A stretch of 40,056 nucleotides of DNA from Octopus bimaculoides (lineage: Eukaryota). The stretch spans positions 25,331,369 through 25,371,424 of the forward strand of contig NC_068981.1 in the NCBI RefSeq assembly GCF_001194135.2, read 5' to 3'. Position numbers and translations under genes: made by a program. Position 1 is the stretch's first letter. The number at the start of each line of letters is the position of its first letter. Under the pieces are notes generated by a model, which saw only the letters and a list, made by a program, of their open reading frames with translations, was not told where the DNA came from and made no database searches. Positions 14,300-36,433 of the stretch are shown one piece after another.

Positions 14300-14397
14300 T
14301 TCAAACACGTGTCTACTGCCACTCCTAATTTCTATATTATACTCCGCTTTCATTTCCCACGCATTCTTGTACTTTAGCAGGAATATCGAATGCTGCT
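14300..14397 (+). pseudogene. IL-17-like gene 1, first-exon remnant
   Basis: Homologous to the gene 2 5' region (aaacacgtgtctactgcc..tatactccgct..GTAAG..tcaataag..tgacgta). Donor GTAAGT at 14398. The only ATG (14390) is out of phase with exon 2. Confidence 0.65.
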
Positions 14398-14569
14398 GTA
14401 AGTCTTCTCAATAAGTGTGACGTAGATTAGATTTTCTCATGATATTACTTTTGTATTTCTCTAACATCATATAATCTTAAAATAAGGAAACATTACTGGA
14501 CGCAAATTGATATAAAAATATGATGTTAGTTATTTATTTCTTTTTTTAATTTCTTTAACAGTATTAACA

Positions 14570-14801
14570 GGCGGCGAGCTGGCAGAAACGTTAGCACGCC
14601 AGACGAAATGCTTAGCGGTATTTCGTCTGCAGTTACGTTCTGAGTTCAAATTCCACCGAGGTCGACTTTGCCTTTCATCCTTTCGGGGTCGATAAATTAA
14701 GTACCAGTTACGCACTGGAGTCGATGTAATCGACCTAATACCTTTGTCTGTCCTTGTTTGTCCCCTCTGTGTTTAGCCCCTTGTGGGCAATAAAGAAATA
14801 A
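14570..14801 (+). mobile_element. SINE family B, full length, inside the gene 1 intron
   Basis: ggcggcgagctggcagaaacgttagc (A box), gagttcaaattcc (B box), gactttgcctttcatcctttcggggtcgataaattaagtacc core; homologous copies at 25790, 26666 and 37156. Confidence 0.9.
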
Positions 14802-15010
14802 GAATCCTTAACACGCCGGGCAAAACGCTTAGCATTTCGTCAGGCCTTGCATTCTGAGTTCAAATTCCTTTCTTACGTTCTGAGTTAAAGATCAAGTTTC
14901 TTTCTTATCCTTTCAAGATCGATAAAATAAGTATCGATTGTGCACTGGAATAGATCTGAACAGCTAACACACTTCCCCAAAATTACTAGCCTTGTGCCAA
15001 AATTTGATAT
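14802..15010 (+). mobile_element. SINE family B, older degenerate copy in tandem
   Basis: acacgccgggcaaaacgcttagc..ttctgagttcaaattcc..gatcgataaaataagta..cttccccaaaatt..gccttgtgccaaaattt. Confidence 0.75.
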
Positions 15011-15071
15011 CTGTATTGATATTCCATATTGTGAAATACTTGACTTAACCGAAATATTTTCTATCTCATAG

Positions 15072-15383
15072 GTGTTCATTCGTGTTGTTTTCTTCCTCTT
15101 CTGCCATGTCATCTTCTCCGTAACTTCGGCGTTATTTACTACCAAATACAAAATACCAACAGATTTGAAAGTCCCATACAAGAGTCCCTCCTGTACAGCC
15201 GTAGGCAATAAATTTCTATCGGCTGAAATGGTTTCAGCTGGACGGTCAAGACTGATCGAAGACGATAAAACTTGCCCAGAATCTTCTCTTTCTGCTGAAC
15301 GTTCAACCTATCCTTGGTACCTGACCATTACTCAGGATTCAACAATTTTCCCTCCATCATATACTGGGGTAGTTTGTCGCTGT
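15072..15383 (+). pseudogene. IL17-like: IL-17-like gene 1, exon 2 5' part (interrupted)
   Basis: Acceptor ttttctatctcatAG at 15070-15071. Translates VFIRVVFFLF..KIPTDLKV..CPES..ERSTYPWYL..FPPSYTGVVCRC, collinear with genes 2 and 3; the RSTC Cys has changed to Tyr. Confidence 0.85.
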
Positions 15384-16390
15384 TGTAGCGACGCAAGTCA
15401 TAATAATAAATTTTGATCGGCAGTAATATGACGTCATTGTCATGTTGCCTGAATAGGCATAATTAGATAGTTTCCCATTGGTTAAAATTACTCCCCATAT
15501 TTGAATTCTAAACTTTCGTCAGAGAAATCTTTCATGAAATGCGGTTCTTAGAATTCAGGTATGAGCAGTTATAAAAACCCTGATTTTTGGGAAATTAATC
15601 AGTAATCGTTGGTTATCACTCATTTCCACGACACTCACTCTTTTGAGATATTGGCTATTTTTATGCCATGTCTATTATTCAATTCAATAAGACTATTTTG
15701 AATTATGGAAGTGGAGAGACAAGTTACTGAAGAGATTGCAAGATTGCAATGAAATTATTTAACAAAAAACTATATACTGTTTATAAATTAATAAAGGACT
15801 GAACCAGTGTGTGTGTTTATTACTGGCATAATGCCTCTCCCAAGGTTTAATTGTATTTCTTTCAACACACGTATCCACATCAAGAATCTTGCACACGAAA
15901 TACACATACGAAATCTAGTAGCTTAGTATGGGAGAATTAGCTAATATAAATTTTATGTCGTAATCCTCTACGACAATTTTCTTTTGACTTATAAATGCAC
16001 TGTAAATATTAAATGAAATCAAATAAATTAATTTAGTAAATAATTTCTGTTTCTTCATTTTCTTCAACCTGTTAATGAAATTTATTTCTGCAACTATGAA
16101 ACTGTTATCATAGCGGTGAAAAGAGCGAGCTTATTTATCTCCAACATATATGTACGTTTCAGCGTCTTGGTGTATATAATTCATCACGGTGTTTACGCAG
16201 CCTGAGTTAATTTTATGTATAATGATAATACTTATAATTAAGTTATAAGTGATGGGTTTCTCACTATAGATTTGTACTCAATAAACATCTGTATTTATTA
16301 TCTTTTCCAAGTCAAAAACATTTAAAACTTGATAATCCAACACAACGGTATAAATTGGTGACCGTATAAGTTAGGTAATTCACCGTTATA
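15384..16390. mobile_element. Solo-LTR-like insertion (1007 bp) with a 4-bp TSD CTGT
   Basis: CTGT at 15380-15383 and 16391-16394. Ends TGTAGCG...CGTTATA form an imperfect terminal inverted repeat typical of TG..CA LTRs (here CA to TA). AATAAA at 16280. Removing the insert restores the IL-17 frame exactly. Confidence 0.75.
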
Positions 16391-16583
16391 CTGTTCAAAG
16401 TGGTTAGACTCTGACAGGCGCAACCACCAATGTGGCATGCTATATAATACAATGACTGTCATCCAACGTATAGATGAATGTCTTGATGAATTGTATGTGT
16501 ATAAACCAAGGCTGATTGAAGTAGCTACAACCTGTGTGTGTGTGCACGTAAGTTTGATGTCGTTAATGGAATATGAAACGTAA
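16391..16583 (+). pseudogene. IL17-like: IL-17-like gene 1, exon 2 3' part (absent from the ORF track)
   Basis: CSKWLDSDRRNHQCGMLYNTMTVIQRIDECLDELYVYKPRLIEVATTCVC..*; TAA at 16581-16583; the 3' UTR aligns with that of gene 2. Confidence 0.88.
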
Positions 16584-16730
16584 AAAAGATCCAAATAACA
16601 AATTGTAAACTGTTATTCGTAATGTGAAGCATCTCGTTGACCACCGTCTGGTTATCATATACTTTATATCGACCTCTATGCATATACATATGCATGCATA
16701 TGCGTGTGTGTATATATATATATATATGTA

Positions 16731-17150
16731 TACTCTTTTACTCTTTTACTTGTTTCAGTCATTTGACTGTGACCATGCTGGAGCACCGCCTTTAGTCGAT
16801 CAAATCGACCCCAAGACTTATTCTGTGTAAGCCTAGCACTTATTCTATCGGTCTCATTTGCCGAACTGCTAAGTTACGGGGACATAAACACACCAGCATC
16901 GATTGTCAAGTGATGTTGGGGGGACAAACACAGGCACACAAACGTATACAGACACACATAAATACATATATATATATACATATATACGACGGGCTTCTCT
17001 CAGTTTCCATCTACCAAATCCACTCACAAGGCTTTGGTCAGCCCAAGGCTATAGTAGAAGACACTTGCCCAAGGTGCTACACAGTGGGACTGAACCCGGA
17101 ACCATGTGGTTGGTAAGCAAGCTGCTTACCACACAATCACTCCTACGCCT
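16731..17150 (-). mobile_element. SINE family A, full length
   Basis: Reverse complement of the 9979-10385 copy from aggcgtaggagtg to the gtaaaagagtaaaagagta tail. Confidence 0.9.
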
Positions 17151-17166
17151 ATGTGTGTATGTATAT

Positions 17167-17444
17167 NNNNNNNNNNNNNNNNNNNNNNNNNNNNNNNNNN
17201 NNNNNNNNNNNNNNNNNNNNNNNNNNNNNNNNNNNNNNNNNNNNNNNNNNNNNNNNNNNNNNNNNNNNNNNNNNNNNNNNNNNNNNNNNNNNNNNNNNNN
17301 NNNNNNNNNNNNNNNNNNNNNNNNNNNNNNNNNNNNNNNNNNNNNNNNNNNNNNNNNNNNNNNNNNNNNNNNNNNNNNNNNNNNNNNNNNNNNNNNNNNN
17401 NNNNNNNNNNNNNNNNNNNNNNNNNNNNNNNNNNNNNNNNNNNN
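17167..17444. other. Assembly gap (N run) flanked by (TA)n
   Basis: Run of n. Confidence 1.
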
Positions 17445-17475
<31 letters not shown>

Positions 17476-18261
17476 CATACAACAAAAATACGTATTCAGA
17501 AGCTTATATCTAATGACAGAAGATGGTTGTTATTAACGTAAGTTGGGTTGCGTTTGATTGAGAAAAGTCACGCGGTGTCATGGTTTGAGGTTGGTATATG
17601 GGTAACAGTTAGTTGGGAAATATTGCATGGCGAACTGCAAATTGACCAAACGGAGAACAGGAAATAGACTAGAAGTCGGTTAGGTTGTTGGCAGGTGGGT
17701 GTAGCAAGGAGCTGCGTGTGCAAGTATATAGTTTTATATGTGGGTATGCAGACGCGCTCATACAGTTTTGCGTGCATGTGTATACTGATGAGAGTGTGCG
17801 CATCTGTACATTGGCACACGTAAGCACATACACTGGCACACACACGCCCAGGAGGAATACTTCCATGTCGCAGGTTCATAAAAGAATGATAGTGTGAAAT
17901 AGTAGAAATTGGCTAAAGAGAGAAGTAAGTAGAAATAGAGAGAGAGAGGTATCGTAATAGAGCGGTAGAGGCAACTGAGGGAAAAAGAGAAAGAGGAATA
18001 ATAAGTAGAGAGGGTGGTCAAATTTATAGAGAAGCAGTTGACAAGGCATTGCGGAAGGGTATACAAAATATAAAAATATAATGAACAATAGGCGTAGAAG
18101 TGGCTGTGTGGTAAGTAGCTTACTTACGAACCACATGGTTCCGGGTTCAGTCTCATTGCGTGGCACCTTGGGCAAGTCTTCTACTATAGCCTCGGGCCGA
18201 GCAAAACCTCGTGAGTGGATTTGGTAGACAGAAACTGAAAGAAGCCCGTTATATATATATA

Positions 18262-18676
18262 TCTTTTACTCTCTTTTACTGGTTTCAGTCATTTGACTGT
18301 GGCCATGCTGGAGCACCGACTTCAGTCGAGCAAATCGACCCCAGGACTTATTCTTTGTATGCCTAGTACTTATTCTATCGTTCTCTTTAGCCGAACCGCT
18401 TAGTTACGGGGACGTAAGCACACCAGCATCGGTTGTCAAGATATGTTGGGGGGGGGACAAACACAGACACACAAACATATACACACACATACATATATAT
18501 ATATATACATATATACGACAGGCTTCTTTCAGTTTCCGTCTACCAAATCCACTCACAAGGCTTTGGTCGGCCCGAGGCTATAGCAGAAGACACTCGCCCA
18601 AGGTGCCACGCAGCGGGACTGAACTCGGAACCATGTGGTTCGTTAGCAAGCTACTTACCACATAGCCACTCCTACA

Positions 18677-18679
<3 letters not shown>
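18262..18679 (-). mobile_element. SINE family A, inner full-length antisense copy
   Basis: Complete reverse-complement copy from head (aggtgtaggagtggc) to tail (gtaaaagagagtaaaagat). Confidence 0.9.
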
Positions 18680-18707
<28 letters not shown>

Positions 18708-18717
18708 NNNNNNNNNN
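18708..18717. other. Assembly gap (10 N)
   Basis: Run of n within (TA)n/(TG)n. Confidence 1.
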
Positions 18718-19534
18718 GCGTGTGTGTGTGTGTTTGTGTGTCTGTGTTTGTCCCCCTAACATCGCTTGACAACCGATGCTGGTGTGTTTACGTCCCCGTA
18801 ATCTAGCGGGTCGGCAAAAGAACCGATAGAATTCTGGGGTCGATTTGCTCGACTAAAGGCGGTGCTCTTGCATGGCCACAGTCAAATGACTGAAACAAGT
18901 AAAAGAGAAAATATAAACAGAAAGATAAAGATAAATAAAGGATTAAAGGTAAAGGAAGATAAAGTAAGAAATACAAGATAAAGAAAAGTAAAGTAAATAC
19001 GTAAATAAAGTAGATAAAAGGGATTCAGACAGACAGGAGACGCTAGTGTTGTTCTTCGAGTTATAGGGGTGACACAGGGAGAAGTGTAGGCATCAGTTTT
19101 ATTGTCAAGTTTAGTGGCCGTAAATATAATCCTAGCTAGCAGTGTATGGGTGATGGAAAGGGTGAATGTGTATTGGAAAACCAGTTAACTTTTAAATCAA
19201 ATTATTTAGTAATGAAATATTAGGGGATCTGTGAGGTTAAGTTTTTAAAAAATTATCTAAAGAATTAATAGTTAGGAATGAAGGGATTACCAGTTGTTAA
19301 CTAAGGTATCAGTAATGATAGAGAAGACATACAATGGCATGAGATGTCTTGCCTTGATATTTGATTTCCTTTTTAACAAATTTATATCCGTTGTGTCGAA
19401 AATCTACAATAGCTTCATAGTTCCATAACTCCTGTCTCGGTTACGAGCTTGGAATCCGTTTCAGCACATAACTAGCATACCTATCAGTTTAGGTTACCTG
19501 TGAACTAAACACACACGCACACACACACACACAC

Positions 19535-19567
<33 letters not shown>

Positions 19568-19689
19568 CACACACACACACACGAACACACACACACACAC
19601 ACACACATATAGATATACATATATACACGTAGAGAAAATATCATTCAAATTTATATTAATATCCTTTATATCCTAGATATTTTATATTA

Positions 19690-20100
19690 ATATCCGGTTG
19701 GTATCTTTCTCAACTGCATCATACGGATAGTAAATCATGGGATCGTAACTGGGGGAATTAGGATGACAGAAATTGGAGCTGATGAAATCGTAGGATTTCT
19801 CCGACAACTACTTCAAACTGTTTCCAGAGGTATGGCAAGGAACCGAATTCGGGTGCCACGTATATGGCCTTCCGGCAGCAACGATCTCAGAGTTTGACTA
19901 CAGTCTCCAGCGGCTTCACATAGCCGTCTTAATTGATCTTAATGCCCTATCTACATATGTGGGGTGACATGCCGTTACGCTCACTGGTGTCGCATCGAAA
20001 TATCATCACAGTTTGTAGGAACTTAATTTTCATGATGCCCATGTTTGTCATACAGCTTTCACAGAGCATTGAGAGGTAGTCATGATGTCGTCATTTTGAT
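19690..20100 (-). mobile_element. Tc1/mariner-superfamily transposase remnant, maT/DD37D-like
   Basis: The minus strand reads KIKFLQTVMIFRCDTSERNGMSPHI..GYVKPLETVVK / VAAGRPYTWHPNSVPCHTSGK / HPNSPSYDPMIYY..AVEKDTNR (compare WQQDSAPCHT and WPPNSPDLNPMDY). Confidence 0.72.
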
Positions 20101-20497
20101 ATTCGGTGCGAATCATCATGATACAGTTAACTCTTTCATGATATTAACATGGATTCCCTTTTTCAATGTCAGCGAACTTTTTCTCAAATAGAACTGTCAT
20201 ATTTACGCTGTCCAATACCGTCGACTGTTCATCAATGGATTGAATGTTCCTGGAAAAAGGAGACACAAAATCGTCAAATTTAGCCTGAACAACCTGTATA
20301 TTAATACGCAAATTGGAATGAAGAGAAAAGTGTTTAAAGAGAAACATACATAAATTAATATCAATAAAATTTGCTAACTTACTTTGGTTGTCTTTACCTG
20401 AATAAGGACAGCAGTATTCATTTTATATTTTTCTTCAAGTAAAGCTTAAGTGTATCGCTTTTCAGTGTTAACATTTGCTTGCTATGCTAGTGGTTGT

Positions 20498-20705
20498 TCT
20501 TTTTTTCTTTTACTTGTTTCAGTTATTTGACTGCGGTTATGCTGGAGCACCGCTTTTAGTCGAACAAATCGACCCCAAGACTTATTCTTTCGAAGCTTAG
20601 TACTTATTTCATCGGTCTCTTTTGCCAAACCGTTATATTACGGAGACGTGAATACACGCACGAACATCGGTCGTTAACCGATGTTGTGGGGATAAATACA
20701 GACAC
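20498..20705 (-). mobile_element. SINE family A, 3' half
   Basis: tttacttgtttcagt..gctggagcaccgc..cgaccccaagacttattc..; ends in (CA)n running to 20756. Confidence 0.8.
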
Positions 20706-22297: not shown

Positions 22298-23135
22298 GGA
22301 CCAACGGGTTTTATATCTTTGTATAGGTTGCAAAGGCGTTTCTTTTCGAAGTTTACCCGCAAGTTTTAATTATTTCAGCTTGCCCATCAACATATTTTAT
22401 CAAGTAGAACTTACTGCTTGTCGAGATAAGGAGAAACAGCTAGAATGAATTTATGAGAGGCACATCTAATCAATGGTATTCTAAAGAAATTCGCTATAGA
22501 TTTGTTCACTTCGGTATTATTTCCGGTAATAGCTACAACATTTTCTAAATTTTTGTTATAAACACTTAACACATACTCTATAAATTCGACATAATAAGAA
22601 GCAGTGAATGATGTCTCACTTACCATTGGCGAAAATGCCAGCAAAACAGTACAATAGTTATTTTGATAAATGTACGAATAAAATGCAAAAAGTCTGACGA
22701 AATACGACGAACCCTTAGTCCAACCATCGAGTACCAACGACGATTTACTCGAAAGTTCACCAGATATTTTCTTTTCCACTTCTCGAGTAAGTTTCTCCAT
22801 GTATTTCTGTAAGGTCACATTTGTCATACTTTCGAAGTTTGTATATTTACGAGTCAGTGGGTCTTTAGTAAAGAAAAGTGGTTTTGAAACAACACACACC
22901 AGCTCAATCTAACCGTAAACGTTTAAGGCCGAGTGACTGACCAAAGAAAACTCGATAAAGATGGTTGTCCGGGTGCTTGAGTAGTAGAATACTCTGGATG
23001 CTGGGTTTTTTTTATATCATTCATAAGATTTGTCCATCAAGTTCCTTTTTTTCTGGGTCAACTTTTCCCAACACCTGCATTTCCATACATACTCACTGTC
23101 TGTTTGGTTAAAATATTTTCTGACGATTTGCTCGT
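22298..23135 (-). mobile_element. hAT-superfamily transposase remnant
   Basis: BED-finger-like WKCRC..KKGT*WTNLMNDIK..HPEY; catalytic LVLDGWT; ITGNN (decayed GDN); CASH (CxxH); LAGKLRKETPLQPIQRYKTRWS; multiple stops and frameshifts. Confidence 0.85.
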
Positions 23136-25007: not shown

Positions 25008-25789
25008 ATCTATAAGTACGGAAAGAACAACAATGAAAACCTACCCATAGCTAATAGATTTGACTGGTGATTCACTCTAATAATAATGACGCTTTAGATA
25101 TGTCCTGGTTACCTTGATCTTTTATGTAGTTATGCAGCTCTCAGCAATTGAATTCGTTTCCGATAAGTGATACAATATCACCCGATTTATTATTTTACCG
25201 GAAGAATATTATTCCGTAGTTTAGTTTGTTCCTTCTTAATATATTTATAAAATTAAATTATTTCATGCATTACGATTTATCAATGGCTATTCCACTGCCT
25301 GTGTTTAATATCATATATAAGCCACTTCAAAGTAGACGGATTCATTAAGAATGAATATTTCAATAAAAACGAACATTACACACTCAGGCCTGAATTGAAA
25401 AAACTACACATAAATCTAAAGATCTCATCCACTCAACAAGAATTATAATGGACCTAACTAAAGTAAGTGATAATGAATAAATGATATTGTGTGATATTTA
25501 TATATGATTTACTTATTTCTATCTGTCCACATACACAAATATATATTTTTTTAAATGACGTTGAAAAAGTCATTGGTCCAATATACACAAAGAAGCACCA
25601 ATCCAAGATGAACTGTGGCAGTTTGCTTGCTTCTTCACCTACATGTTGGTGATGGAGTTTTAATGAAATATTTCATTTGTATACTAGAAAACATGTTCAT
25701 TCAAATTTTTCTTAGTTACAAATAATCAGGGATAAGCGATATTATATAAATGTAATATGGAGAATATTTAAGGTAACAAGTTGTCGAGG

Positions 25790-25976
25790 TTGTAAGTACA
25801 CCGGGCAAAATGCTTAGCGGCATTTCATCCGTCTTTACGTTCTCAGTTCGAATTCCGCCGAGGTCCACTTTGCTTTTCATCCTTTTGGGAATCAGTACCA
25901 GTTGAACACTGGGATCGATGTAATCGACCAACCTCCTAATCCAAAACTGCCAGCTTTGAGCCAAAATCTGAAACCA
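25790..25976 (+). mobile_element. SINE family B, degenerate
   Basis: caccgggcaaaatgcttagcgg..cagttcgaattccgccgagg..gtaccagttgaacactgggatcgatgtaatcgac. Confidence 0.8.
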
Positions 25977-26665: not shown

Positions 26666-26879
26666 GGCGGCGAGCTGGCAGAAACGTTAGCACGCCGGGT
26701 GAAATGCTTAGCGGTATTTCGTGTCTTTACGTTCTGAGTTCAAATTTCCCTGAGGTCGACTTTGCCTTTCATCCTTTCGAGGGTCGATAAATTAAGTACC
26801 AGTTGCCTCTGGGGGTTGATCTAATTAACTGGCACCCTCTCCAAAAATTTCGGGCCTTGTGCCTAGAGTGGGAAAGAAT
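26666..26879 (+). mobile_element. SINE family B, full length
   Basis: Same head and core as 14570-14801, with the alternative tail ccctctccaaaaatttcgggccttgtgcctagagt. Confidence 0.9.
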
Positions 26880-27226
26880 CTTGTATGTAGTGTTTTAAAC
26901 AATCCTCATTTAAAAAATAAAAATTACACACATTTGTGAGCACTCTTCTATAGCCCTGCACCGACGAAATCTTTGTGAGTAGATTTGGTAGATGGAAACT
27001 GAAAGAAGCCCGGTGTATGTGTATATATAAATTGATATAAGCAGTTAGACGCAACATAACACCATAGAGAAAGAAAAAAAATTATCACCACTAATTGTGA
27101 CTGAAGATGACGAAAGGTGTGTGTGTGTATCAGTGTTTGTCTCCCATCACTATTCGACAACTGGTGTTGGTATGTTTATGTGCCCCTAACCAATAGAATA
27201 TGCATGAAGCTTAAAAATATAAAGTA

Positions 27227-27328
27227 TAAAAATATATAGTTCACTCTCACAGCATATGGCCTAGTGGTTAAGAGCGCGGACTACTAACCCCAAGATTCCA
27301 AGTTAGATTCCAAGCAGTGACCTGAATG

Positions 27329-27359
<31 letters not shown>

Positions 27360-27524
27360 GAACATCAAAAAATACCTTAGGAATGAGAACCCAGGTTCGA
27401 AATTTCTCCAAGACACATGAAGAAGGCTGGAGAGTATATCAGCCGAAACGTTGTGTTAACAACAAACAAGATGAGGACAAATATCCGTCGAATGTAAATA
27501 ATATTCATAAATATAGAACTGTAT
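27227..27524 (+). mobile_element. SINE-like element: tRNA-derived head, (AAT)n, then a Penelope-type hammerhead-bearing tail
   Basis: A box tggcctagtggttaag and decayed B box aagttagattcc; (AAT)n; hammerhead motif at 27413-27456; flanked by TATAAAGTA at 27218-27226 and 27525-27533. Confidence 0.65.
27413..27456 (+). ncRNA. Minimal type I hammerhead ribozyme-like motif (C3-to-A core change)
   Basis: Stem I acac / core ATGAAGA / stem II ggctg-gagagtatat-cagcc / GAAA / CG / TT / stem I gtgt. Confidence 0.6.
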
Positions 27525-27685
27525 TATAAAGTACCAGGGTCGAATCATTCGACTAAAATTTTTTCGAGGCGGCGCTCCAGCATGGCCGCGGTCTAATGGC
27601 TGAAACAAGTAAAAGATGAAAGATAATTAGCGATATTTATTGAAAAGTACAGCGTATCAGCTTTTATCCTGTACACCCTCACCAG

Positions 27686-27693
27686 TATATAAA
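27686..27693 (+). promoter_or_regulatory. Candidate TATA box of IL-17-like gene 2
   Basis: TATATAAA about 100 bp upstream of the first-exon coding segment, inside the block homologous to the gene 1 upstream region. Confidence 0.45.
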
Positions 27694-27793
27694 TTAAGTA
27701 ATAAAGCAAGTGACCATGTGACCTAGGATATTAAACGTGTCTACTGCCGCACCTACTTTCTATACTATACTCCGCTCTAATATCACTCACATT

Positions 27794-27820
27794 ATATGGA
27801 TAGTAACTGATACTTCCGTG
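27794..27820 (+). other. IL-17-like gene 2, putative first coding exon lacking an in-frame ATG
   Basis: Donor GTG|GTAAGC at 27821. The 27 nt upstream read ATA TGG ATA GTA ACT GAT ACT TCC GTG (9 codons, as in gene 3). The ATG at 27796 is out of phase and meets TGA after 4 codons. Confidence 0.55.
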
Positions 27821-27939
27821 GTAAGCTTTTTGTCAATAAGTTTGACGTACGTTAGATTTTATCATATTGTTTAACGCTATTAATATATATTTTAGAAAAT
27901 AAAATATTTCACTTAACAGAAATACTTTCTGTCTTACAG

Positions 27940-28482
27940 GTATTTATCCACTTTGTATTATTCCTCTTCTTCAACGCCATCTTGTTCATAATTTCGGCGT
28001 CATTTACGACCAAATACAAAATACCAACAGATTTGAAAGTCCGATACGAGAGACTCTCCAGTGCAGCCGTTGGCAATAAATTTTTTCTACCCGCTGAAAT
28101 GGCTTCAACTGGAAGTAGACAGCCAAGGCTCAACGACGGTGATAAATTTTGCCCAAAATCTCTTTCTACTGATATTATCCTTGAACGTTCAACCTGCCCA
28201 TGGTACCTGACTACTACTCATGATTCAACAGTTTTCCCTCCATCACGTACTGAAGTAGTGTGTCGCTATGGACACTGTCTAGACCTTGACAACAATCATC
28301 AATGTGTAACAGTATATAATAAAATGTCTGTCCTCAAACGTACAGGTGAATGTGTCGATGGATTGTATGTGTACAAACCAAGCGTGATTGAAGTAGCCAC
28401 AGCTTGTGTATGTGCACGAACATTACATAACATTAATGGGAGAAATGAAAGCCAATGTGCAACGAAAAATGGACCAATATAA
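27940..28482 (+). CDS. IL17-like: IL-17-like cytokine gene 2, exon 2 (180 aa, open; start codon uncertain)
   Basis: Acceptor tttctgtcttacAG at 27938-27939; hydrophobic signal-peptide core VFIHFVLFLFFNAILFIISA; motifs ERSTCPWY, EVVC..C, HQC, VLKR..C, VATACVC of the IL-17 cystine-knot family. Confidence 0.85.
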   Translation, partial: VFIHFVLFLFFNAILFIISASFTTKYKIPTDLKVRYERLSSAAVGNKFFLPAEMASTGSRQPRLNDGDKFCPKSLSTDIILERSTCPWYLTTTHDSTVFPPSRTEVVCRYGHCLDLDNNHQCVTVYNKMSVLKRTGECVDGLYVYKPSVIEVATACVCARTLHNINGRNESQCATKNGPI

Positions 28483-29358
28483 CAAAATATAAACTGTTAT
28501 TCAGAATATATGAAGCATTTCATAGATCGCCATGCGGTTATTATAAAGTTCGCATATATACACATACAAACATACCTACACTACATACGTATACATATAT
28601 GAGTTTGTGTGTATGTGTGTGCGTGTGCGTGTGTGTGTATGTGTAATGAGTGTGTCTATATATGTATGTTACTACTTGAAACCTATTTAATCGTCTTATA
28701 GCGACAATGGATATCACAAAACCACTCTGTGAGCAGCGACATCGTATACAGTACGCTTCACAGCACATAATGCAATCTCACCATATTTCTACATAAACGC
28801 TCACACTCATTCCTATTCTTTATTTGGAACGTTTTTCCCTATTATCCTCTTTCTCACTGATAACCTATCTAGACTTCACAGAACATAAAAATCCAAAATT
28901 ATAGTCATAACAATTGTTAGCGCACTGGTTTAATTACAAGATTTCAAACCCCTCACGTAATGAATTTTGGTGTTTGGATCACTACAGTTAAAAATATCTA
29001 CTAGTTATTTATGTTTTACTTAATCTACATTTGCTCCTTCTTTTCAAAAACTTCCGTTGTCGGTTTCAATGAATTTTCGGATTTAAGTGTAATAACACCG
29101 ATGTCTACTTTGCTAAACAACATTTTGTAATTGATTAAATGTTTATAGAACGAGGGACGATAAAAGCAGTTATAGTATTCTCACATATGATTGGCCTCGC
29201 ATATGATATTAAATATGTAGTTTGATTTATATTGTAATTTAACTGAAAACTAAATTGACAGACATGATCTCACTTACACATATAATCTACAAACATAGCA
29301 TTATATATCTATATACTCTTTTCTCTGTATGCATCAAACACACACACATGCGCCTGTA

Positions 29359-30769: not shown

Positions 30770-30851
30770 CCATCTGGTTCGCCAGTCCTCAGTCAAATCG
30801 TCTAACCCATGCTAGAATGGAAAGCGGACGTTAAACGATGATGATGATGAT
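30770..30851 (+). mobile_element. 3' tail of an RTE-type retroposon ending in (GAT)n
   Basis: aacccatgctagaatggaaagcggacgttaaacgatgatgatgatgat. Confidence 0.55.
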
Positions 30852-30872
30852 ACATATATATATATATATATA

Positions 30873-31274
30873 NNNNNNNNNNNNNNNNNNNNNNNNNNNN
30901 NNNNNNNNNNNNNNNNNNNNNNNNNNNNNNNNNNNNNNNNNNNNNNNNNNNNNNNNNNNNNNNNNNNNNNNNNNNNNNNNNNNNNNNNNNNNNNNNNNNN
31001 NNNNNNNNNNNNNNNNNNNNNNNNNNNNNNNNNNNNNNNNNNNNNNNNNNNNNNNNNNNNNNNNNNNNNNNNNNNNNNNNNNNNNNNNNNNNNNNNNNNN
31101 NNNNNNNNNNNNNNNNNNNNNNNNNNNNNNNNNNNNNNNNNNNNNNNNNNNNNNNNNNNNNNNNNNNNNNNNNNNNNNNNNNNNNNNNNNNNNNNNNNNN
31201 NNNNNNNNNNNNNNNNNNNNNNNNNNNNNNNNNNNNNNNNNNNNNNNNNNNNNNNNNNNNNNNNNNNNNNNNNN
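30873..31274. other. Assembly gap (N run) flanked by (TA)n
   Basis: Run of n. Confidence 1.
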
Positions 31275-31284
31275 ATATATATAT

Positions 31285-31315
<31 letters not shown>

Positions 31316-31317
31316 CC

Positions 31318-31460
31318 ATGGGTTCTTTCAGTTTCTGTCTACAAAATTCACTCACAAGGCTTTGGTCGGCGCAAGGTTATTGTAAAAGATACTTGCACGA
31401 GGTGCCACGTATTGGGACCGAACTCAGAACCACGTGTGTGGGAAGCAAGCTTCTTAACAC
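31318..31460 (-). mobile_element. SINE family A, 5' half, degenerate
   Basis: ttctttcagtttctgtctac..cactcacaaggctttggtcgg..gtgccacg..aagcaagcttcttaacac. Confidence 0.75.
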
Positions 31461-31999
31461 AAATCCACGGCACGCACACAAACGCTTATATATATGTTGT
31501 ACCGTTCCGTTATACGTGTGATAATAAGAAGTACTCCATCAAGCGAGTGTTAGATATCGTTTAATATGCACAAATGTGCGCTACTCTAAGTGCTATTCTT
31601 CTGACATTGCGAAAGTCGGACGAGCTTGTATTGAATCATGTATATTATCATGTAATCGTTCAAGCGGAAACGCAATGAGAAATAACTAGGAGAGAAACAT
31701 AGTATCGAAAGAAAAAACAGAAACAAAGGAAAACGAAATGAGTAAAAAAGCATAGAGGGATGGTAGATAAGAGTTGTGTCCCTTTAAATAGGATTTTTTT
31801 TGTTTTTGTGTGAGATAAATTCGACGGTAAACTTTTTGTGACGCTCTATGAAAAATTATACCATTTAAAAAAATGTAGCCTCTCTATTTTGTTCAGTGGA
31901 AATGTGGGTTTAAGTTAATCGATATGCAATTAATTTGATATGAAAATAAGAATGCTTATTACAATTTATTTATACACTATCAATATAGCCACCGCACAG

Positions 32000-32440
32000 T
32001 CTATCGAGTCCAGCCTTCACATGTATAAGTTGACATGCTCTAGCTTACAGAGTGTGTGGGAGTCGTCGGCTACACACACCATGGTTTAGACGACCTGTTG
32101 AAGCATTGTCCGACGTATAACAACTGTTGCATGCAGAAAGTTGCGTGAATCCATACGTGAAAGTTGAGTATCAGGTGATAACCAAAGCGAGCGAACTACT
32201 CTGAAGAGCATTTCATGTTCCACTGTCAGAGTTATTATCCCATTCAGACAACCCACGTAACGCATTGCTGGGGCACAATGAAAACGCGAACTTCGCAACT
32301 CCTCGCCTTCAATTCCAACAAACCACCAGTGCCCAACTTGCGGCCGTACCTTCTGACTATGCGTCGGTCGATTCGGCCAAGGTCGGACACATCGCGTCCA
32401 ATGTTCTTTTGCTATGTGATTTCTTTGGTCATTGTCAAAA
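32000..32440 (+). mobile_element. Highly degenerate RTE-type LINE C-terminus with a C2H2-like motif
   Basis: A third frame absent from the ORF track reads KRELRNSSPSIPTNHQCPTCGRTF*LCVGRFGQGRTHR, resembling LINE C-termini of the form H-CPTCGR-F-ARIGL-SH-RTH. Confidence 0.45.
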
Positions 32441-33927
32441 ACGATGGACGAGCTAATACTAGTAACATCAATGTTGCTATGGTGTAGGAGAATATTATGG
32501 TAATAGATAGATTATGAATTTGATTTATACAACGCAATTACTAAGTATACCTTCCGTATAGAAATTGGCTGACGAAGCATTTGCTTAATTTGTTTGTAGA
32601 AAGAAGTTGAGTCCTAGAGCTGAACATTTATTATGTTCTAGATGTGTTTCATAAGATTCTTTGGTGCTTATTTATGTTCCCAATTTTGCATGTTGTCAAA
32701 TAACATCTGAAATTCTGAATTCATTACTTCGTAGTTAGCATGTAAGTTATGGCGTTATACCTTAAGATACTTAGAGAAAATAATCTGTAAAATGTGGATT
32801 TTGTGATTTTTTTCATTGGTTTTTAGCCCTCTTGAAGTATTGTTAAAAGATTTTCCGTTCATTTTATCGATTCTTGTCTCAGTTCGTTCGTATCAGAGGT
32901 GAATATATACTGTGTGGTTCTAGCGAGGTAATACCGTGAAATCTATACCTGGATTAAATGAGACGCTCTTCGTAATGCCTGATTCATAGGTATAGATACA
33001 AGGTCAGACAGTACAAGCAGGTTGTAGAACAGGAAAACTTCTTCACTAAATTTAATTGCATATCTTTAGGCTTTAGTACATTTACTTGAGTTCAGCTGGG
33101 CATGTAGTCAGTGAGTGAAAGTTTACAGGCTTTATTCAGGCCAGAGAAAGAAAATATGAACATAACACAGTACACGTTATGTATTGATAATACATTTTTT
33201 ATTGATATTAGAATCCAATTCTTTACAATACAATAAATATGTAATACAAATTAACATATATGTCTAATGTTCTGCATTATGGAAAAGCAACGGTAAAATA
33301 TATTCGAACACTTTTATAATTATTCTATGGATGATAGATATAATTCTAAATATATACATAGTAAAAATCAAATAATATATTAAAAAAAATATTATTTATA
33401 CACTTATAGCGACACACACACACACACATATATATATATATGAGCATCTGTGCCCAAGCAAATACATATACAAACAGATACTCACGCCTACATCCGCTCA
33501 CACGTACATAATGAATAATGTTAAAGTATATAAAAAAATGCGCACATATAAAAATCAAATATTTATGTAAATATTACATAAATGTAAATATTAGTGAACT
33601 CAGTACTAGTGTTTAAGTAACTATATGATATGGATATGGATTCAGAGAATCTTACAGCTATCACAGTAAGCTCCTCTTACGGACTCGCCTATCAGTTCAC
33701 GTAATAGTTAGTTACAATGTCAAATATCTGTGGAAGCTAGCTTTCTTTATTTGCATCAATTTTGGAATATAGAATTGTACTCTACAATGATGAACAATGG
33801 TATATAAGAATACATTCCTAGTATAGAGAAAGTAAGACATGTAGAAAGTTGCGAAACGGCTGTAATCCTACGAAAGCCAGGAATTAAATATTATATACAT
33901 TCATCTGACAAATCGCTCAACTTTATA

Positions 33928-33981
<54 letters not shown>

Positions 33982-34494
33982 ATTCATTTTGCTTATTACT
34001 ACAGTTATGTTCCGTAGTTAAATTTTTTTATATGTACGACAGAGTGTCAGCGAAGAAGGATAATATGTGCACTGGAATGTGTGTGCAGGTGTCTGTATTT
34101 CTATTCTTGGTTGGTTCATGTAATGAGGATTAAACCATAATGATCGGAGTATGTAATTTTAAGAAAGGGTCATGTATATGGAAATATACTCCAATACCAT
34201 TTATTGGTTTGAAATATTTATATAAAATAAAGCCTAATATAGGTTGAGGTAGAAAAAAAAAAGAAAAGGAAAAAAAGGAAATGTTAATGTTGTATTAAAT
34301 ATGATAGTAAGTAAGATAAGAGTTCCCTTCAGTGTTTACAAAATAGAAAACAAACTTATTTGGAAGAAATACGTTTCAGCAGCATTTAGGAAAGTTTTTG
34401 CCTATGTATGTATGTATGTATGTATGTATGTATGTATTTATTTATGTATGTATGTATGTATGTATGTATGTATGCGTGTGTGCATTTTCAAATA

Positions 34495-35197
34495 CAGAAC
34501 GGGGCAGAGAGGACGGACGTTTTTGAAATAGCCATTACTCAGACCCAGCAGGAGGTATATATGTCCGACAGTTACTATTCAGTACGTGGTGTATTGCACA
34601 GGCCAAAACTGACGGTCTGGTGTGCTGTTGGAAAAGCTACAGTCACTGCTCCTTACTTTGTTGAAGACAATAATGAAAATGCTTTTACTGTGAACTCCAA
34701 GCGTTACATCGAGATGACAAACAATTTTTTTGTGCCTGAATTACAACGAAACTTTATGCCTACTCGACGTGTGAGGGATGGGGCGACGGCCCATACAGTC
34801 AGAGCATCAATGGATGTTCTTCGCCCTCTCTTCAGTGACTACTTCATTTCCAGGTTTGCTGATTTGTCCATGTGTGATTATTTCTTGTGAGGAAACCTCA
34901 GGGTACATCTATATGCACATAAGCTCTGTACATTGGACGATTTGAAGGAAGCTGTTCGTATGGAAGTCGCCCAAATCGACAAAGCAATGCTGGAGAGAAT
35001 GGAGGCCAACTTACAAGAACGCCTTCAGAAATGCATCAATGAAAACAAGCACCACATGATGGCTGTTGTTTTGCACACTCACATTTGACAAATGCTAATT
35101 CAAAACGAACACATTGATGTCAAAGAAATTTGTTTGCATCTAAAATGAATGATTTTGTGAAGTTTTCAAAAACGTCCGTCCTCTCTGTCCCATATTA
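34495..35197 (+). mobile_element. Internally deleted Tc1/mariner element (DD41D/Visitor-like) with TIRs and a TA TSD
   Basis: 34-bp TIRs containing cagagaggacggacgtttttgaaa (34495-34528 and 35164-35197), TA on both sides. The ORF reads LHRPKLTVWCA..PYFVEDN..TVNSKRY..DGATAHT..LSMCDYFL*G; the WPPRSPD motif is deleted. Confidence 0.88.
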
Positions 35198-35393
35198 TAG
35201 ATATATGCATATTTATATGCACATATATATATATTTATATTTGCCTGTGTATATGTATGTTGGATGGATGGGAGTGTGTTTGTGTGTTTGAGTGTATGTA
35301 TATTTGTATATGTATATATATACAAGCAAAACGCATATATATGTGAGTGTGTGTGAAAAAAGGAGAGAGAAAGAGATAAATAATGAGCGAGCG

Positions 35394-35399
35394 TTTATT
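35394..35399 (-). promoter_or_regulatory. Candidate polyadenylation signal of IL-17-like gene 3
   Basis: First AATAAA on the minus strand, about 140 nt after the stop codon. Confidence 0.4.
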
Positions 35400-35538
35400 T
35401 GCATATACACGCTTGTATGATTTTTTTTTCTGTACATGTTTCGTATAACAACCACACAGTGGTTTACTTAAACTTCCATAACATTATGAAAAACTTTTGT
35501 GTTACACACAATTGAATGTTTGATGATTTTGGCCGATA

Positions 35539-36069
35539 TTACGACTCATATTCGTCACCATTTCCTCCGGATATTATATCGATTTTCCGTGCACACACAC
35601 AGGCTGTGGCTACATGGATGACACTTGGTTGATAAACGTACAGTCCATCAATACATTCGACTGTACGTTTCAGGACAGTCGTTGGAGTATATACCATCAC
35701 ACATTGATGATTACTGTCAGAGTCCAGACAGTCTGTACAGCGACAAACGACTTCAGTGCGTGATGGAGGAAAATATGTCGAATTGTGGGTAATTTTCAGG
35801 TACCATGGGCAGGTTGAACGTTCGCGGATGATATCAGTAGATACAGGAGATGTTGGGCACGTTTTATCCCCTTCGGTCAGTTCTTGTTGGTCACTTCCCG
35901 CTGGAGCTATTTCAGCTGGTAGAAAAAAGTTATTGCCGATCGCTGCGCTGGATAGTTTCTCGTATTGGACTTTCAAGTCTTTTGGTATTTTACATTGAGT
36001 CGGAATTGACGCCGAAGATATGAACAATACGACGTTGGTGAGGAGGAAGATTACAGCCTGGAGGAGAAC
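35539..36069 (-). CDS. IL17-like: IL-17-like cytokine gene 3, exon 2 (176 aa plus stop)
   Basis: Acceptor atatcacgcAG at 36071-36070. VLLQAVIFLLTNVVLFISSA signal core; ERSTCPWY, EVVCRCTDC (CxCxxC), HQC, VLKRTVEC, VATACVC; 10 Cys; N-glycosylation sequon NST. Confidence 0.93.
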   Translation of the reverse strand, partial: VLLQAVIFLLTNVVLFISSASIPTQCKIPKDLKVQYEKLSSAAIGNNFFLPAEIAPAGSDQQELTEGDKTCPTSPVSTDIIRERSTCPWYLKITHNSTYFPPSRTEVVCRCTDCLDSDSNHQCVMVYTPTTVLKRTVECIDGLYVYQPSVIHVATACVCARKIDIISGGNGDEYES

Positions 36070-36190
36070 CTGCGTGATATAAAATGTTTATGTCAAGTTC
36101 AGTAATTATATTTCAATATGACACACAGTTAAATGAATGAACGAATTGAAGAATAGTACACTACATTTGTAGCACACATACACTCACTCA

Positions 36191-36281
<91 letters not shown>

Positions 36282-36406
36282 ACTCACTCGCATATACGCA
36301 CACACAAATCTTTATATCAAAACCAGTTTATGAAAGACTAGAGGGCATTCATTGTAATGTATGCAGGTTTATTTTGTGAAAGAAATCTAATGAATGAAAT
36401 ACTTAC

Positions 36407-36433
36407 GACAAGACTTGAATAAACTGTTGACAT
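36407..36433 (-). CDS. IL17-like: IL-17-like cytokine gene 3, exon 1 (MSTVYSSLV)
   Basis: ATG TCA ACA GTT TAT TCA AGT CTT GTC|GTAAGT: canonical donor, phase 0, 337-bp intron to the exon 2 acceptor, completing a 185-aa secreted protein. Confidence 0.8.

What the first reader, a model, noticed from the sequence alone, without database searches (positions are those of the whole stretch)
14300..36433. Three IL-17-like paralogues caught at three stages of birth-and-death evolution
Seen: three collinear two-exon genes with the same phase-0 intron inside the signal peptide. Genes 1 and 2 are in tandem on the plus strand and share promoter, first exon, intron start and 3' UTR; gene 3 is inverted and more divergent. 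Gene 3 is intact, gene 2 lacks an in-frame ATG, and gene 1 is disrupted. Established: Octopus has a large, mostly clustered expansion of IL-17-like genes. Inference: this window is part of such an array, and gene counts based on single ORFs would over-count functional copies and mis-call starts. The ORF track misses exon 1 in all three genes.
Basis: partly seen in the sequence, partly recalled or inferred. Interest (0 to 1): 0.75.

Follow-up and report, generated by a model that had tools for sequence, protein, structure and literature searches.

The report
Octopus IL-17 cluster: two genes, one pseudogene

Summary
The window is Octopus bimaculoides chromosome CM046601.1, about 25.331-25.371 Mb, inside the published IL-17-like gene cluster.

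The real first coding exon is 15 nt (ATG plus four codons, GTAAGT donor, phase 0) and lies 1.8-2.5 kb upstream, behind a conserved TATATAAG promoter block.
- **Gene 3:** exon 1 is at 37872-37858 (MNTTN), outside the finding's interval.
- **Gene 2:** exon 1 is at 25448-25462 (MDLTK).

Relatives have ATA instead of ATG there, and no GT donor. The block read as the shared promoter and exon 1 of genes 1 and 2 is intron.

Gene 2 therefore has a start codon and is intact. It is divergent: two non-knot cysteines lost, a stop-loss extension, and no close orthologue among the O. sinensis and O. vulgaris proteins found.

Gene 1 is a real unprocessed pseudogene. It carries a 1,011-bp insertion in exon 2, a +2 frameshift and three lost conserved cysteines. 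No exon 1 was found, and it evolves neutrally.

The assembly gaps lie in (TA)n tails of intergenic repeats and touch no exon. Birth-and-death holds at cluster level; the "three stages" anatomy does not. Ordinary and largely known.

The parts
14260..15071 (+). Gene 1: surviving 3' part of the intron.
   Evidence: 14260-14440 matches gene 2 intron 27692-27865 at 71%, and 15034-15071 matches the last ~38 nt of the gene 2 intron. The SINE-like copies match 26666-26863 and 37156-37356. In phase 0 the block reads GISNAA without an ATG. No GTRAGT donor between the gap and exon 2 has an in-frame ATG.
15072..15384 (+). Gene 1 pseudogene: 5' piece of exon 2, from the hydrophobic core of the signal peptide to ...VVCRC.
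   Evidence: tblastn and family HMM. 78% identical to gene 2 at the DNA level. STCPW has become STYPW. Three in-frame deletions of 3, 6 and 12 nt.
15385..16395 (+). 1,011-bp insertion that breaks gene 1 exon 2. It is bounded by the direct repeat CTGTT (15380-15384 and 16391-16395) and brings an in-frame TGA at 15414-15416.
   Evidence: Homology to genes 2 and 3 stops at about 15384 and resumes at about 16396. The sister relic L002:400-745 reads straight through the site. The insert is 31% GC, has no ORF longer than 71 aa, and has no other copy in the window; among the ~150 kb of fetched loci there is only one 51-nt match at 80% (L007).
16396..16580 (+). Gene 1 pseudogene: 3' piece of exon 2 up to the ancestral stop (TAA at 16578-16580). 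It carries a +2 (TG)n frameshift near 16537 and a 14-nt deletion downstream.
   Evidence: The family-like reading CVCARKFDVVNG is in a different frame from the upstream ...EVATT. The knot cysteine codon TGT is TGG (Trp) at 16401-16403. Pfam IL17 scores 20.4 bits for this piece alone and 35.7 bits for the joined pieces.
16581..16659 (+). Gene 1 3' UTR remnant, homologous to the gene 2 3' UTR.
   Evidence: 16421-16659 matches 28293-28545 at 72% (alignment).
25141..25447 (+). Gene 2 promoter and 5' UTR block, with TATATAAG at 25314-25321.
   Evidence: Homologous to the gene 3 promoter block (62.7% over 402 nt, E 1.7e-23). nhmmer E 6e-43. TTCCACTGC, TATATAAG and ATTATAATG are invariant in six aligned genes.
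25448..25462 (+). Gene 2 true coding exon 1: ATG GAC CTA ACT AAA (MDLTK), followed by a GTAAGT donor, phase 0.
   Evidence: It encodes the N-terminus of XP_014769325.1 and XP_052830608.1. The gene is called at exactly these coordinates in GCA_001194135.2. It is the only stop-free ATG-to-GTRAGT candidate in the 2.9 kb upstream of exon 2.
25716..25772 (+). Gene 2 optional 57-nt exon (LQIIRDKRYYINVIWRIFK), present only in the current RefSeq model of 204 aa.
   Evidence: It is flanked by AG and GT and keeps the frame. It is not covered by the homology with gene 3, which ends at about 25522.
27692..27939 (+).
   Evidence: In phase 0 it reads IWIVTDTSV without an ATG, and the nearby ATG at 27796 runs into a TGA. 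Its 71% identity to gene 1 is what neutral divergence predicts for dS 0.34.
27940..28482 (+). Gene 2 exon 2: an intact 180-codon reading frame ending at TAA 28480-28482.
   Evidence: Pfam IL17 at 49.1 bits. The AlphaFold model has pLDDT 77-95 over the core, and the top 50 Foldseek hits in the PDB are all IL-17A or IL-17F. All four knot cysteines are kept; two others are changed to Tyr; the ancestral stop TAA has become AAA, adding 5 codons.
35539..36069 (-). Gene 3 exon 2: an intact 176-codon reading frame plus stop.
   Evidence: 100% identical to XP_014769326.1. Pfam IL17 at 48.3 bits. It departs from the family at 0 of 26 near-invariant columns.
36070..37857 (-). Gene 3 intron (1,788 nt).
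37858..37872 (-). Gene 3 true coding exon 1: ATG AAT ACG ACC AAC (MNTTN), followed by a GTAAGT donor, phase 0. It lies outside the finding's interval.
   Evidence: It is identical apart from one synonymous base in three O. bimaculoides paralogues and one O. sinensis gene.
37873..38181 (-). Gene 3 promoter and 5' UTR block, with TATATAAG at 38015-38008.
   Evidence: 84-90% identical to the same block of paralogues and of an O. sinensis gene. nhmmer E 1.8e-73. Alignment.

Best explanation
The window is a 40-kb piece of the Octopus bimaculoides IL-17-like gene cluster (chromosome CM046601.1, about 25.331-25.371 Mb). It holds two intact genes and one unprocessed pseudogene.

GENE PLAN. Every intact family member whose locus I examined has the same plan:
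- a TATA-box promoter (TATATAAG) about 130 nt upstream of the ATG;
- a first coding exon of usually 15 nt (ATG plus four codons; only the ATG in one subfamily) ending in a GTAAGT donor;
- a phase-0 intron of 1.3-2.9 kb that is full of SINE-like and other repeats;
- one large exon that encodes the hydrophobic core of the signal peptide and the cystine-knot cytokine domain.

GENE 3 (37872-37858 plus 36069-35539, minus strand, 181 aa) belongs to a young clade. It has at least three near-identical O. bimaculoides paralogues (dS 0.08-0.12 for the two measured, P0045 and P0046) and is under purifying selection.

GENE 2 (25448-25462 plus 27940-28482, 185 aa, with an optional 57-nt middle exon) is intact but divergent.

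GENE 1 is the dead sister of gene 2.
- Its lineage first lost three conserved cysteines. One is a knot cysteine, changed to Trp before gene 1 and a relic about 85 kb away were duplicated.
- Gene 1 then took a 1,011-bp insertion in exon 2 and a +2 frameshift.
- Its upstream region now holds a LINE fragment and an assembly gap, and no recognisable exon 1 or promoter.

MECHANISM.
- Inferred from the arrangement of the copies: they arise by local tandem duplication and inversion.
- Shown here: copies diverge, and some are killed by insertions and point lesions.
- Inferred from the IL-17 family, not tested here: the intact products are secreted disulfide-knot dimers that signal through IL-17 receptors.
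For: - **Identity of the locus.** Window 15448-38482 is base-for-base identical to CM046601.1:25346816-25369850. Genes are called there at exactly the coordinates I give.
- **Family membership.** Pfam IL17 hits. Alignment to human IL-17F places all four knot cysteines. The predicted gene 2 structure matches IL-17A/F.
- **True exon 1.** Annotated N-termini are MNTTN and MDLTK, and both map to the window. The promoter/exon-1 block is 84-90% conserved within the gene 3 clade and is still alignable between genes 2 and 3. A 15-nt exon 1 with a GTAAGT donor is recovered in other paralogues.
- **Gene 1 lesions.**
- **Conserved columns.** Gene 1 departs from the family at 7 of 26 near-invariant columns, gene 2 at 2, gene 3 at 0.
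- **Lineage-specific changes.** Gene 1 has 44 non-synonymous and 10 synonymous changes (omega about 1.3). Gene 2 has 15 and 6 (about 0.75).
- **Relative-rate test on amino acids.** 30 changes unique to gene 1 against 10 unique to gene 2, p = 0.0016.
- **Tree.** Genes 1 and 2 are sisters on long branches; gene 3 sits in a tight clade.
- **Sister relic.** It shares 17 derived sites with gene 1, against 4 (gene 1 with gene 2) and 1 (gene 2 with the relic) for the other pairings.
- **Upstream of gene 1.** A LINE reverse transcriptase fragment.
- **Cluster.**. Published expansion: PMC8353272 and PMC6279123.
Against: - No transcript data could be examined. The exon structure rests on RefSeq models, on conservation, and on the matching N-terminus of the Amphioctopus protein A0A290GIF9. 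I did not see the evidence behind that entry.
- Gene 2's functional status is not settled.
  - Its branch omega (about 0.75, from 21 changes) cannot be told apart from 1.
  - It lost two cysteines that are conserved in at least 95% of the other family members aligned.
  - It lost its ancestral stop codon.
  - No protein more than 67% identical was found in O. sinensis or O. vulgaris.
- Gene 1's first exon could lie in the unread gap 13235-13548.
- The nature of the 1,011-bp insertion is unknown. It has no terminal inverted repeats, no poly-A tail, and no full second copy in the sequence available.
Confidence: 0.85

Rival explanations
1. Exon 1 of genes 1 and 2 lies about 120-680 nt upstream of exon 2 (near 14390 and 27800), and exon 1 of gene 3 is at 36433-36407. 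Gene 2 would then be a copy that has just lost its start codon.
For: The gene 3 candidate is a stop-free ATG-to-GTAAGT stretch in phase 0 and gives a plausible signal-peptide start. The gene 1 and gene 2 blocks are homologous and each ends in GTAAG.
Against: - The ATG and the GT donor of the gene 3 candidate are both absent at the homologous site in three relatives.
- Four of the six strong donors upstream of gene 3 have an in-frame ATG, so such candidates are cheap.
- The gene 1 / gene 2 block has no in-frame ATG in either gene, and its 71% identity is no higher than neutral expectation.
- Annotated proteins from three octopod species start with the 5-residue exon instead.
- The conserved TATA block lies 1.8-2.5 kb upstream.
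Confidence: 0.04
2. Gene 2 is structurally intact but functionally dying or dead: transcribed, with a complete reading frame, yet no longer under effective selection. On this reading the "middle stage" is real, for a different reason than the reader gave.
For: - Branch omega is about 0.75 and cannot be told apart from neutral.
- Two near-invariant cysteines are lost, one new tail cysteine gives an odd total of nine, and a stop-loss adds 5 codons.
- No close orthologue was found among annotated O. sinensis or O. vulgaris proteins, although the gene 1 / gene 2 split (dS 0.34) looks older than the species split (dS about 0.2).
- The current RefSeq model inserts 19 residues into the signal-peptide region.
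Against: - The 185-codon frame, both splice sites, the start context and the promoter motifs are all intact.
- The four knot cysteines and 24 of 26 near-invariant columns are kept.
- It accumulated a third as many unique amino-acid changes as its dead sister over the same time (p = 0.0016).
- The core is modelled confidently as an IL-17 fold.
Confidence: 0.3
3. Gene 1 only looks dead because of the assembly. Its exon 1 would be hidden in the gap 13235-13548, and the 1-kb insert would be a misassembly or a newly gained intron.
For: - The gap begins about 1.5-1.8 kb upstream of exon 2, which is where exon 1 sits in the other genes.
- Both coding pieces are open and in the same frame once the insert and one CTGTT copy are removed.
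Against: - The insert junctions lie in unique sequence with no gap nearby.
- The insert ends are not GT...AG in a position that would restore the frame.
- Independent lesions remain: the knot cysteine changed to Trp, STCPW changed to STYPW, a +2 frameshift, and omega about 1.3.
- The knot-cysteine change is shared with a plainly decayed relic elsewhere in the cluster.
- No protein model for gene 1 appears among the called genes or the database hits.
Confidence: 0.05

Closest known systems
Octopus bimaculoides IL-17-like gene expansion (Albertin et al. 2015, as cited in PMC8353272: 31 genes; 36 genes in GCF_001194135.1)
   Same: Genes 2 and 3 are members that are already annotated (XP_014769325.1 / XP_052830608.1 and XP_014769326.1). 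They lie on the same chromosome as the other six members I fetched, and share their exon plan and domain.
   Different: Nothing differs for genes 2 and 3. The gene 1 pseudogene, and the relics at 20490-20351 and L002:400-745, are not among the protein models I could see. I could not check whether RefSeq lists them as pseudogenes.
Vertebrate IL-17A / IL-17F (PDB 1jpy, 4hsa, 5nan and others)
   Same: The PF06083 domain, the four cystine-knot cysteines in the C-x4-C ... C-x-C arrangement, the RST(S/C)PW motif and the beta-strand core fold.
   Different: About 22-25% identity. The octopus proteins carry six further cysteines and a longer N-terminal segment. The vertebrate IL-17A and IL-17F genes have a different exon plan (from my own knowledge, not tested here). 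Receptor usage in octopus is untested.
Expanded IL-17 repertoires of marine bivalves and sea urchin (PMC8353272)
   Same: Large, lineage-specific, clustered families. Two exons is the commonest structure in mussel. Signal-peptide exons are easily missed by annotation, as that paper itself notes.
   Different: These are independent expansions. The 15-nt first coding exon described here was checked only in octopods.
Birth-and-death evolution of tandem immune gene families (Nei and colleagues; from my own knowledge)
   Same: The cluster holds recent duplicates (dS 0.08-0.12), an old divergent copy, and pseudogenes and relics side by side.
   Different: The window does not show the neat three-step series that was claimed. 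The supposed intermediate stage was an annotation error.

Membership tests
IL-17 cytokine family (Pfam PF06083) | Match to the IL17 domain profile above the curated cut-off (24 bits) | tested here: met
   Gene 2 scores 49.1 bits and gene 3 scores 48.3 bits. Gene 1 with its two pieces joined scores 35.7 bits; its 3' piece alone scores 20.4 bits and its 5' piece alone gives no hit.
IL-17 cytokine family (Pfam PF06083) | Four cystine-knot cysteines (C-x4-C on one strand, C-x-C on another) | tested here: met
   Met for genes 2 and 3. Alignment to human IL-17F pairs vvCRctdC with aqCRnlgC and aCvC with gCtC, and these columns are invariant in the family alignment. NOT met for gene 1, where the second knot cysteine is Trp (TGG at 16401-16403).
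IL-17 cytokine family (Pfam PF06083) | IL-17 beta-strand cystine-knot fold | tested here: met
   AlphaFold model of the gene 2 exon-2 product: mean pLDDT 72, and 77-95 over residues 81-160. The top 50 Foldseek hits in the PDB are all IL-17A or IL-17F, with E from 2e-5 and TM-score on the target of 0.53-0.70. Genes 1 and 3 were not modelled.
IL-17 cytokine family (Pfam PF06083) | N-terminal signal peptide, meaning a secreted protein | tested here: inconclusive
   By inspection only. After the 5-residue exon come about 17 hydrophobic residues and then SSA|S (gene 3) or ISA|S (gene 2). The model shows a helix at residues 2-20. No signal-peptide predictor was available.
IL-17 cytokine family (Pfam PF06083) | Dimerisation and signalling through IL-17 receptors with SEFIR domains | not testable with these tools
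   Needs protein expression and binding or reporter assays.
Octopod IL-17-like cluster genes | Very short first coding exon (15 nt in most) with a GTAAGT donor, a phase-0 intron of 1.3-2.9 kb, and a conserved TATATAAG block upstream | tested here: met
   Met for genes 2 and 3. NOT met for gene 1: no such block was found in any readable sequence upstream.
Octopod IL-17-like cluster genes | Location in the chromosomal array | tested here: met
   The window lies at CM046601.1 25.331-25.371 Mb. Other members lie at 24.98, 25.06, 25.42, 25.45 and 25.52 Mb.
Unprocessed (duplicated) pseudogene - gene 1 | Homology to a functional paralogue that extends into intron and UTR, which rules out a retrocopy | tested here: met
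   The intron block, exon 2 and the 3' UTR are all homologous to gene 2.
Unprocessed (duplicated) pseudogene - gene 1 | Disabling lesions in the coding sequence | tested here: met
   A 1,011-bp insertion that brings an in-frame stop, a +2 frameshift, three conserved cysteines lost, and no exon 1 found.
Unprocessed (duplicated) pseudogene - gene 1 | Neutral pattern of substitution | tested here: met
   44 non-synonymous and 10 synonymous lineage-specific changes, omega about 1.3. Three times as many unique amino-acid changes as gene 2, p = 0.0016. Counts are small and the method is parsimony.
Unprocessed (duplicated) pseudogene - gene 1 | No functional transcript | not testable with these tools
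   No RNA-seq data could be accessed.

The most novel reading that the evidence does not exclude
Gene 2 may be a functional IL-17-like cytokine specific to the O. bimaculoides lineage, with a rewired disulfide pattern. It has lost two otherwise near-invariant non-knot cysteines. One of these losses is shared with gene 1 and so predates their duplication. It has also gained a cysteine in a new 5-residue C-terminal extension created by stop-codon loss.

The gene 1 lineage also shows that a copy which had already lost a knot cysteine went on being duplicated across about 85 kb of the array.
Probability: 0.25. Interest if true: 0.3.

Novelty: already known. Interest (0 to 1): 0.15.

Why it matters
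It matters mainly as a caution. In this family the first coding exon is only 15 nt long and lies 1.3-2.9 kb from the rest of the gene. Neither an ORF scan nor reading by eye can place it.

Plausible ATG-plus-GTAAGT decoys occur by chance inside the intron; four of the six strong donors upstream of gene 3 have one. Superseded RefSeq and 2015 gene models of these same genes made comparable errors. One gene 2 model took its first exon from a repeat.

Counts of functional IL-17-like genes in octopus (31-36 in the literature) should rest on checks of exon 1, the knot cysteines and the reading frame. At least two unannotated dead copies, gene 1 and the relic in L002, lie within about 100 kb here. 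None of this changes what is known about the expansion.

Tried and rejected
- **More copies in the window.** I looked for further IL-17 copies or a hidden gene 1 exon 1 using tblastn, a six-frame family-HMM search and an nhmmer profile of the promoter/exon-1 block. These found only the three known second exons, plus two weak exon-1-like relics on the minus strand (20490-20351 and 1184-1039). Nothing turned up upstream of gene 1.\n- **Gene 1 frame under selection.** I considered that gene 1's reading frame stayed under selection until recently, because several of its indels are multiples of three. I rejected this after finding the +2 and -14 indel pair in the 3' piece.\n- **Classifying the insertion.** I tried to classify the 1,011-bp insertion. 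It has no second copy in the window and only one 51-nt match at 80% among the fetched loci, no terminal inverted repeats, no long ORF and no poly-A tail. Only a 5-bp direct repeat bounds it. It stays unclassified.\n- **Insertion as a new intron.** I considered this reading and found no frame-preserving GT...AG pair.\n- **Orthologues of genes 1 and 2.** The protein search found nothing above 67% identity, and there is no copy within 10 kb of one O. sinensis member of the gene 3 clade. The O. sinensis and O. vulgaris genomes themselves could not be searched.\n- **Transcript evidence.** I looked for contigs that encode the 185-aa gene 2 protein exactly; none is on record.\n- **Literature.** The Albertin 2015 paper is not held in the library, so the published gene counts are cited second-hand from PMC8353272.\n- **Other ORFs.** Pfam found nothing at E <= 0.01 for the ORFs at 22411-22899, 34408-34890 and 2445-2822. 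ARAGORN found no tRNA-like gene in the SINE-like repeats.\n- **Disulfide partners.** The partners of the two cysteines lost in gene 2 could not be worked out, because the structure tool returns no coordinates.

Full report
**What the window is.** Window positions 15448-38482 are base-for-base identical to Octopus bimaculoides chromosome CM046601.1:25346816-25369850 in assembly GCA_001194135.2. The window therefore spans about 25,331,369-25,371,424.

Six further IL-17-like genes that I fetched lie on the same chromosome between 24.98 and 25.52 Mb. The window is thus part of the known clustered expansion. PMC8353272 cites 31 genes from Albertin et al. 2015 and itself counts 36 in GCF_001194135.1. 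The O. minor genome paper also reports an IL-17 expansion (PMC6279123).

**Checking the observation.** Three IL-17-like second exons are present.
- Gene 1: 15072-15384 plus 16396-16580, plus strand.
- Gene 2: 27940-28482, plus strand.
- Gene 3: 36069-35539, minus strand.

Pfam PF06083 scores are 49.1 bits for gene 2, 48.3 bits for gene 3, and 35.7 bits for the joined gene 1 pieces, against a curated cut-off of 24. A six-frame search with a family HMM finds no fourth copy in the readable sequence.

- 14260-14440 with 27692-27865, 71% identical;
- exon 2, 78% identical;
- the end of the coding sequence plus about 80 nt of 3' UTR, 72% identical.

Gene 3 shares only exon 2 and about 40 nt of intron with gene 2.

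**The gaps, tested.** The three gaps inside the finding (17167-17444, 18708-18717, 30873-31274) each sit in a (TA)n run. The first two follow copies of one ~430-nt repeat at 16741-17166 and 18271-18695. All three are intergenic, and no exon, intron or reading frame of the three genes crosses them. Whether the sequence is continuous across them cannot be established here.

A fourth gap, at 13235-13548 and outside the finding, is the only one that bears on the interpretation. It lies where gene 1's first exon would be expected.

**The first exons are elsewhere.** The database protein identical to gene 3's exon 2 (XP_014769326.1, 181 aa) begins MNTTN and not MSTVYSSLV. O. sinensis proteins also begin MNTTN, and the Amphioctopus fangsiao protein A0A290GIF9 begins MNNTN.
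- MNTTN is encoded at 37872-37858 on the minus strand and is followed by GTAAGT.
- Gene 2's RefSeq products begin MDLTK. This is encoded at 25448-25462 and is followed by GTAAGT.
- The assembly's called genes start at exactly those bases.
- The current gene 2 model (XP_052830608.1, 204 aa) adds a 57-nt exon at 25716-25772.

The roughly 240 nt around exon 1 are 84-90% identical between gene 3, three O. bimaculoides paralogues and an O. sinensis gene. This block can still be aligned between genes 2 and 3 (62.7% over 402 nt, E 1.7e-23). TTCCACTGC, TATATAAG, ATTATAATG and GTAAGT are invariant in all six sequences. Splitting the coding sequences of further paralogues recovers the same 15-nt exon 1 and phase-0 intron. 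One subfamily keeps only the ATG in exon 1.

- Four of the six strong donors in the 2.2 kb upstream of gene 3 have a stop-free in-frame ATG, so such candidates arise easily.
- The block read as the shared promoter and exon 1 of genes 1 and 2 has no in-frame ATG in either gene.
- That block is 71% identical between the two genes. This is what neutral divergence predicts for their dS of 0.34. It is simply the 3' end of the intron.
- In gene 2, the annotated exon is the only ATG-to-GTRAGT candidate in 2.9 kb.

"Gene 2 lacks an in-frame ATG" is therefore an artefact of a misplaced exon.

**Gene 3.** It is intact and departs from the family at 0 of 26 near-invariant columns. It sits in a tight clade with three O. 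bimaculoides paralogues. For the two measured, P0045 and P0046, dS is 0.08-0.12 and omega 0.3-0.4. The O. sinensis genes lie at dS about 0.2. This is the "birth" end of the process.

**Gene 2.** Its reading frame, splice sites and promoter motifs are intact. All four knot cysteines are kept, as placed by alignment to human IL-17F. An AlphaFold model of its exon-2 product has pLDDT 77-95 over the core, and its top 50 PDB matches are all IL-17A or IL-17F.

It is nevertheless unusual:
- Two cysteines conserved in at least 95% of the other family members aligned are changed to Tyr. One change is shared with gene 1 and so predates their duplication.
- The ancestral stop TAA has become AAA, which adds KNGPI, and a new cysteine appears in the tail.
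- Its branch omega is about 0.75, from 15 non-synonymous and 6 synonymous changes. This cannot be told apart from 1.
- No protein more than 67% identical exists in the O. sinensis or O. vulgaris sets.

Against decay, it accumulated only 10 unique amino-acid changes where gene 1 accumulated 30 over the same time (p = 0.0016). My estimate is about 0.7 that it is functional and about 0.3 that it is decaying.

**Gene 1.** It is the sister of gene 2 and a clear unprocessed pseudogene.
- A 1,011-bp insertion (15385-16395) splits exon 2 between CRC and SKWLD, and an in-frame TGA follows at 15414. The insertion is bounded by the direct repeat CTGTT, is 31% GC and has no long ORF. It has no other copy in the window, and only one 51-nt match among the ~150 kb of fetched loci.
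- A decayed sister relic about 85 kb away (L002:400-745) reads straight through the insertion site. It shares 17 derived sites with gene 1, including the knot cysteine changed to Trp. That loss therefore predates both their duplication and the insertion.
- A +2 (TG)n frameshift near 16537 and a 14-nt deletion follow.
- Seven of 26 near-invariant columns are changed, and omega is about 1.3.
- No promoter/exon-1 block exists in readable sequence upstream. A LINE reverse-transcriptase fragment (RVT_1, E 2e-11) and the gap occupy that space.

**Verdict.** The broad inference is right: this is an IL-17-like array that evolves by birth and death, and exon 1 is invisible to ORF lists. The specific anatomy is not: all three first exons were misplaced, and the "no ATG" intermediate stage does not exist.

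What is here is two annotated genes and one pseudogene in a known cluster, which is ordinary. The useful residue is a caution about 15-nt first exons and about dead copies inflating counts of functional genes.

**Limits.** No transcript evidence could be examined. The substitution counts are small and based on parsimony.

Noticed in passing
window 20351-20490 (-): A degraded copy of the IL-17 promoter/exon-1 block (nhmmer E 8.8e-6). It keeps ...CAACCAAAGTAAGT but has no ATG. No exon 2 is found downstream on that strand, although the gaps at 18708-18717 and 17167-17444 lie where one would be expected. It may be the relic of a fourth, lost gene.
   Followed up: partly
window 1039-1342 (-): A weaker match to the exon-1/promoter block (blastn 57.8% over 353 nt; nhmmer E 0.015), with AAG where the ATG should be. 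Any exon 2 would lie beyond the left end of the window.
   Followed up: partly
L002:1-830 (CM046601.1, about 25,431,570-25,432,398, minus strand): An unannotated, decayed IL-17 exon-2 relic with a TAG inside the PW motif, its 5' half replaced by a repeat, and a frameshift. It is the sister of gene 1 and lies about 9 kb upstream of the intact gene XP_052821809.1.
   Followed up: yes
window 10400-13234 (-), running into the gap 13235-13548: A non-LTR retrotransposon fragment. The ORF at 11184-11756 matches RVT_1 (E 2e-11), and further open frames on the same strand extend to 13147.
   Followed up: partly
window 16741-17166, 18271-18695 and 20505-20687; pieces at 26944-27626: A ~430-nt repeat (84-90% identical between the first two copies, which are 1,530 nt apart). 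Each of those two copies ends in a (TA)n run where the assembly breaks. Fragments of the repeat also lie in the gene 2 intron, and the first exon of the 2015 gene 2 model (27107-27170, MTKGVCVY...) was drawn from one of them.
   Followed up: partly
window 14570-14730, 14801-14998, 25801-25923, 26666-26863, 37156-37356: A SINE-like repeat is present in the introns of all three genes (80-88% identical between the best copies). ARAGORN finds no tRNA-like gene in the window.
   Followed up: partly
window 28465-28482: Stop-codon loss in gene 2. The family's ancestral TAA reads AAA, which extends the protein by KNGPI. Six bases upstream of that codon a Tyr codon has become Cys.
   Followed up: yes
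window 22411-22899 (-) and 34408-34890 (+): Two ORFs of about 160 aa in the intergenic regions. Their sequences look transposase-like by eye, but neither has a Pfam hit at E <= 0.01.
   Followed up: partly
window 13903-14006, 36183-36289, 38354-38483: Long microsatellites: (TTA)35 upstream of the gene 1 remnant, (CT)n in the gene 3 intron, and (TATC)33 just upstream of the gene 3 promoter.
   Followed up: no
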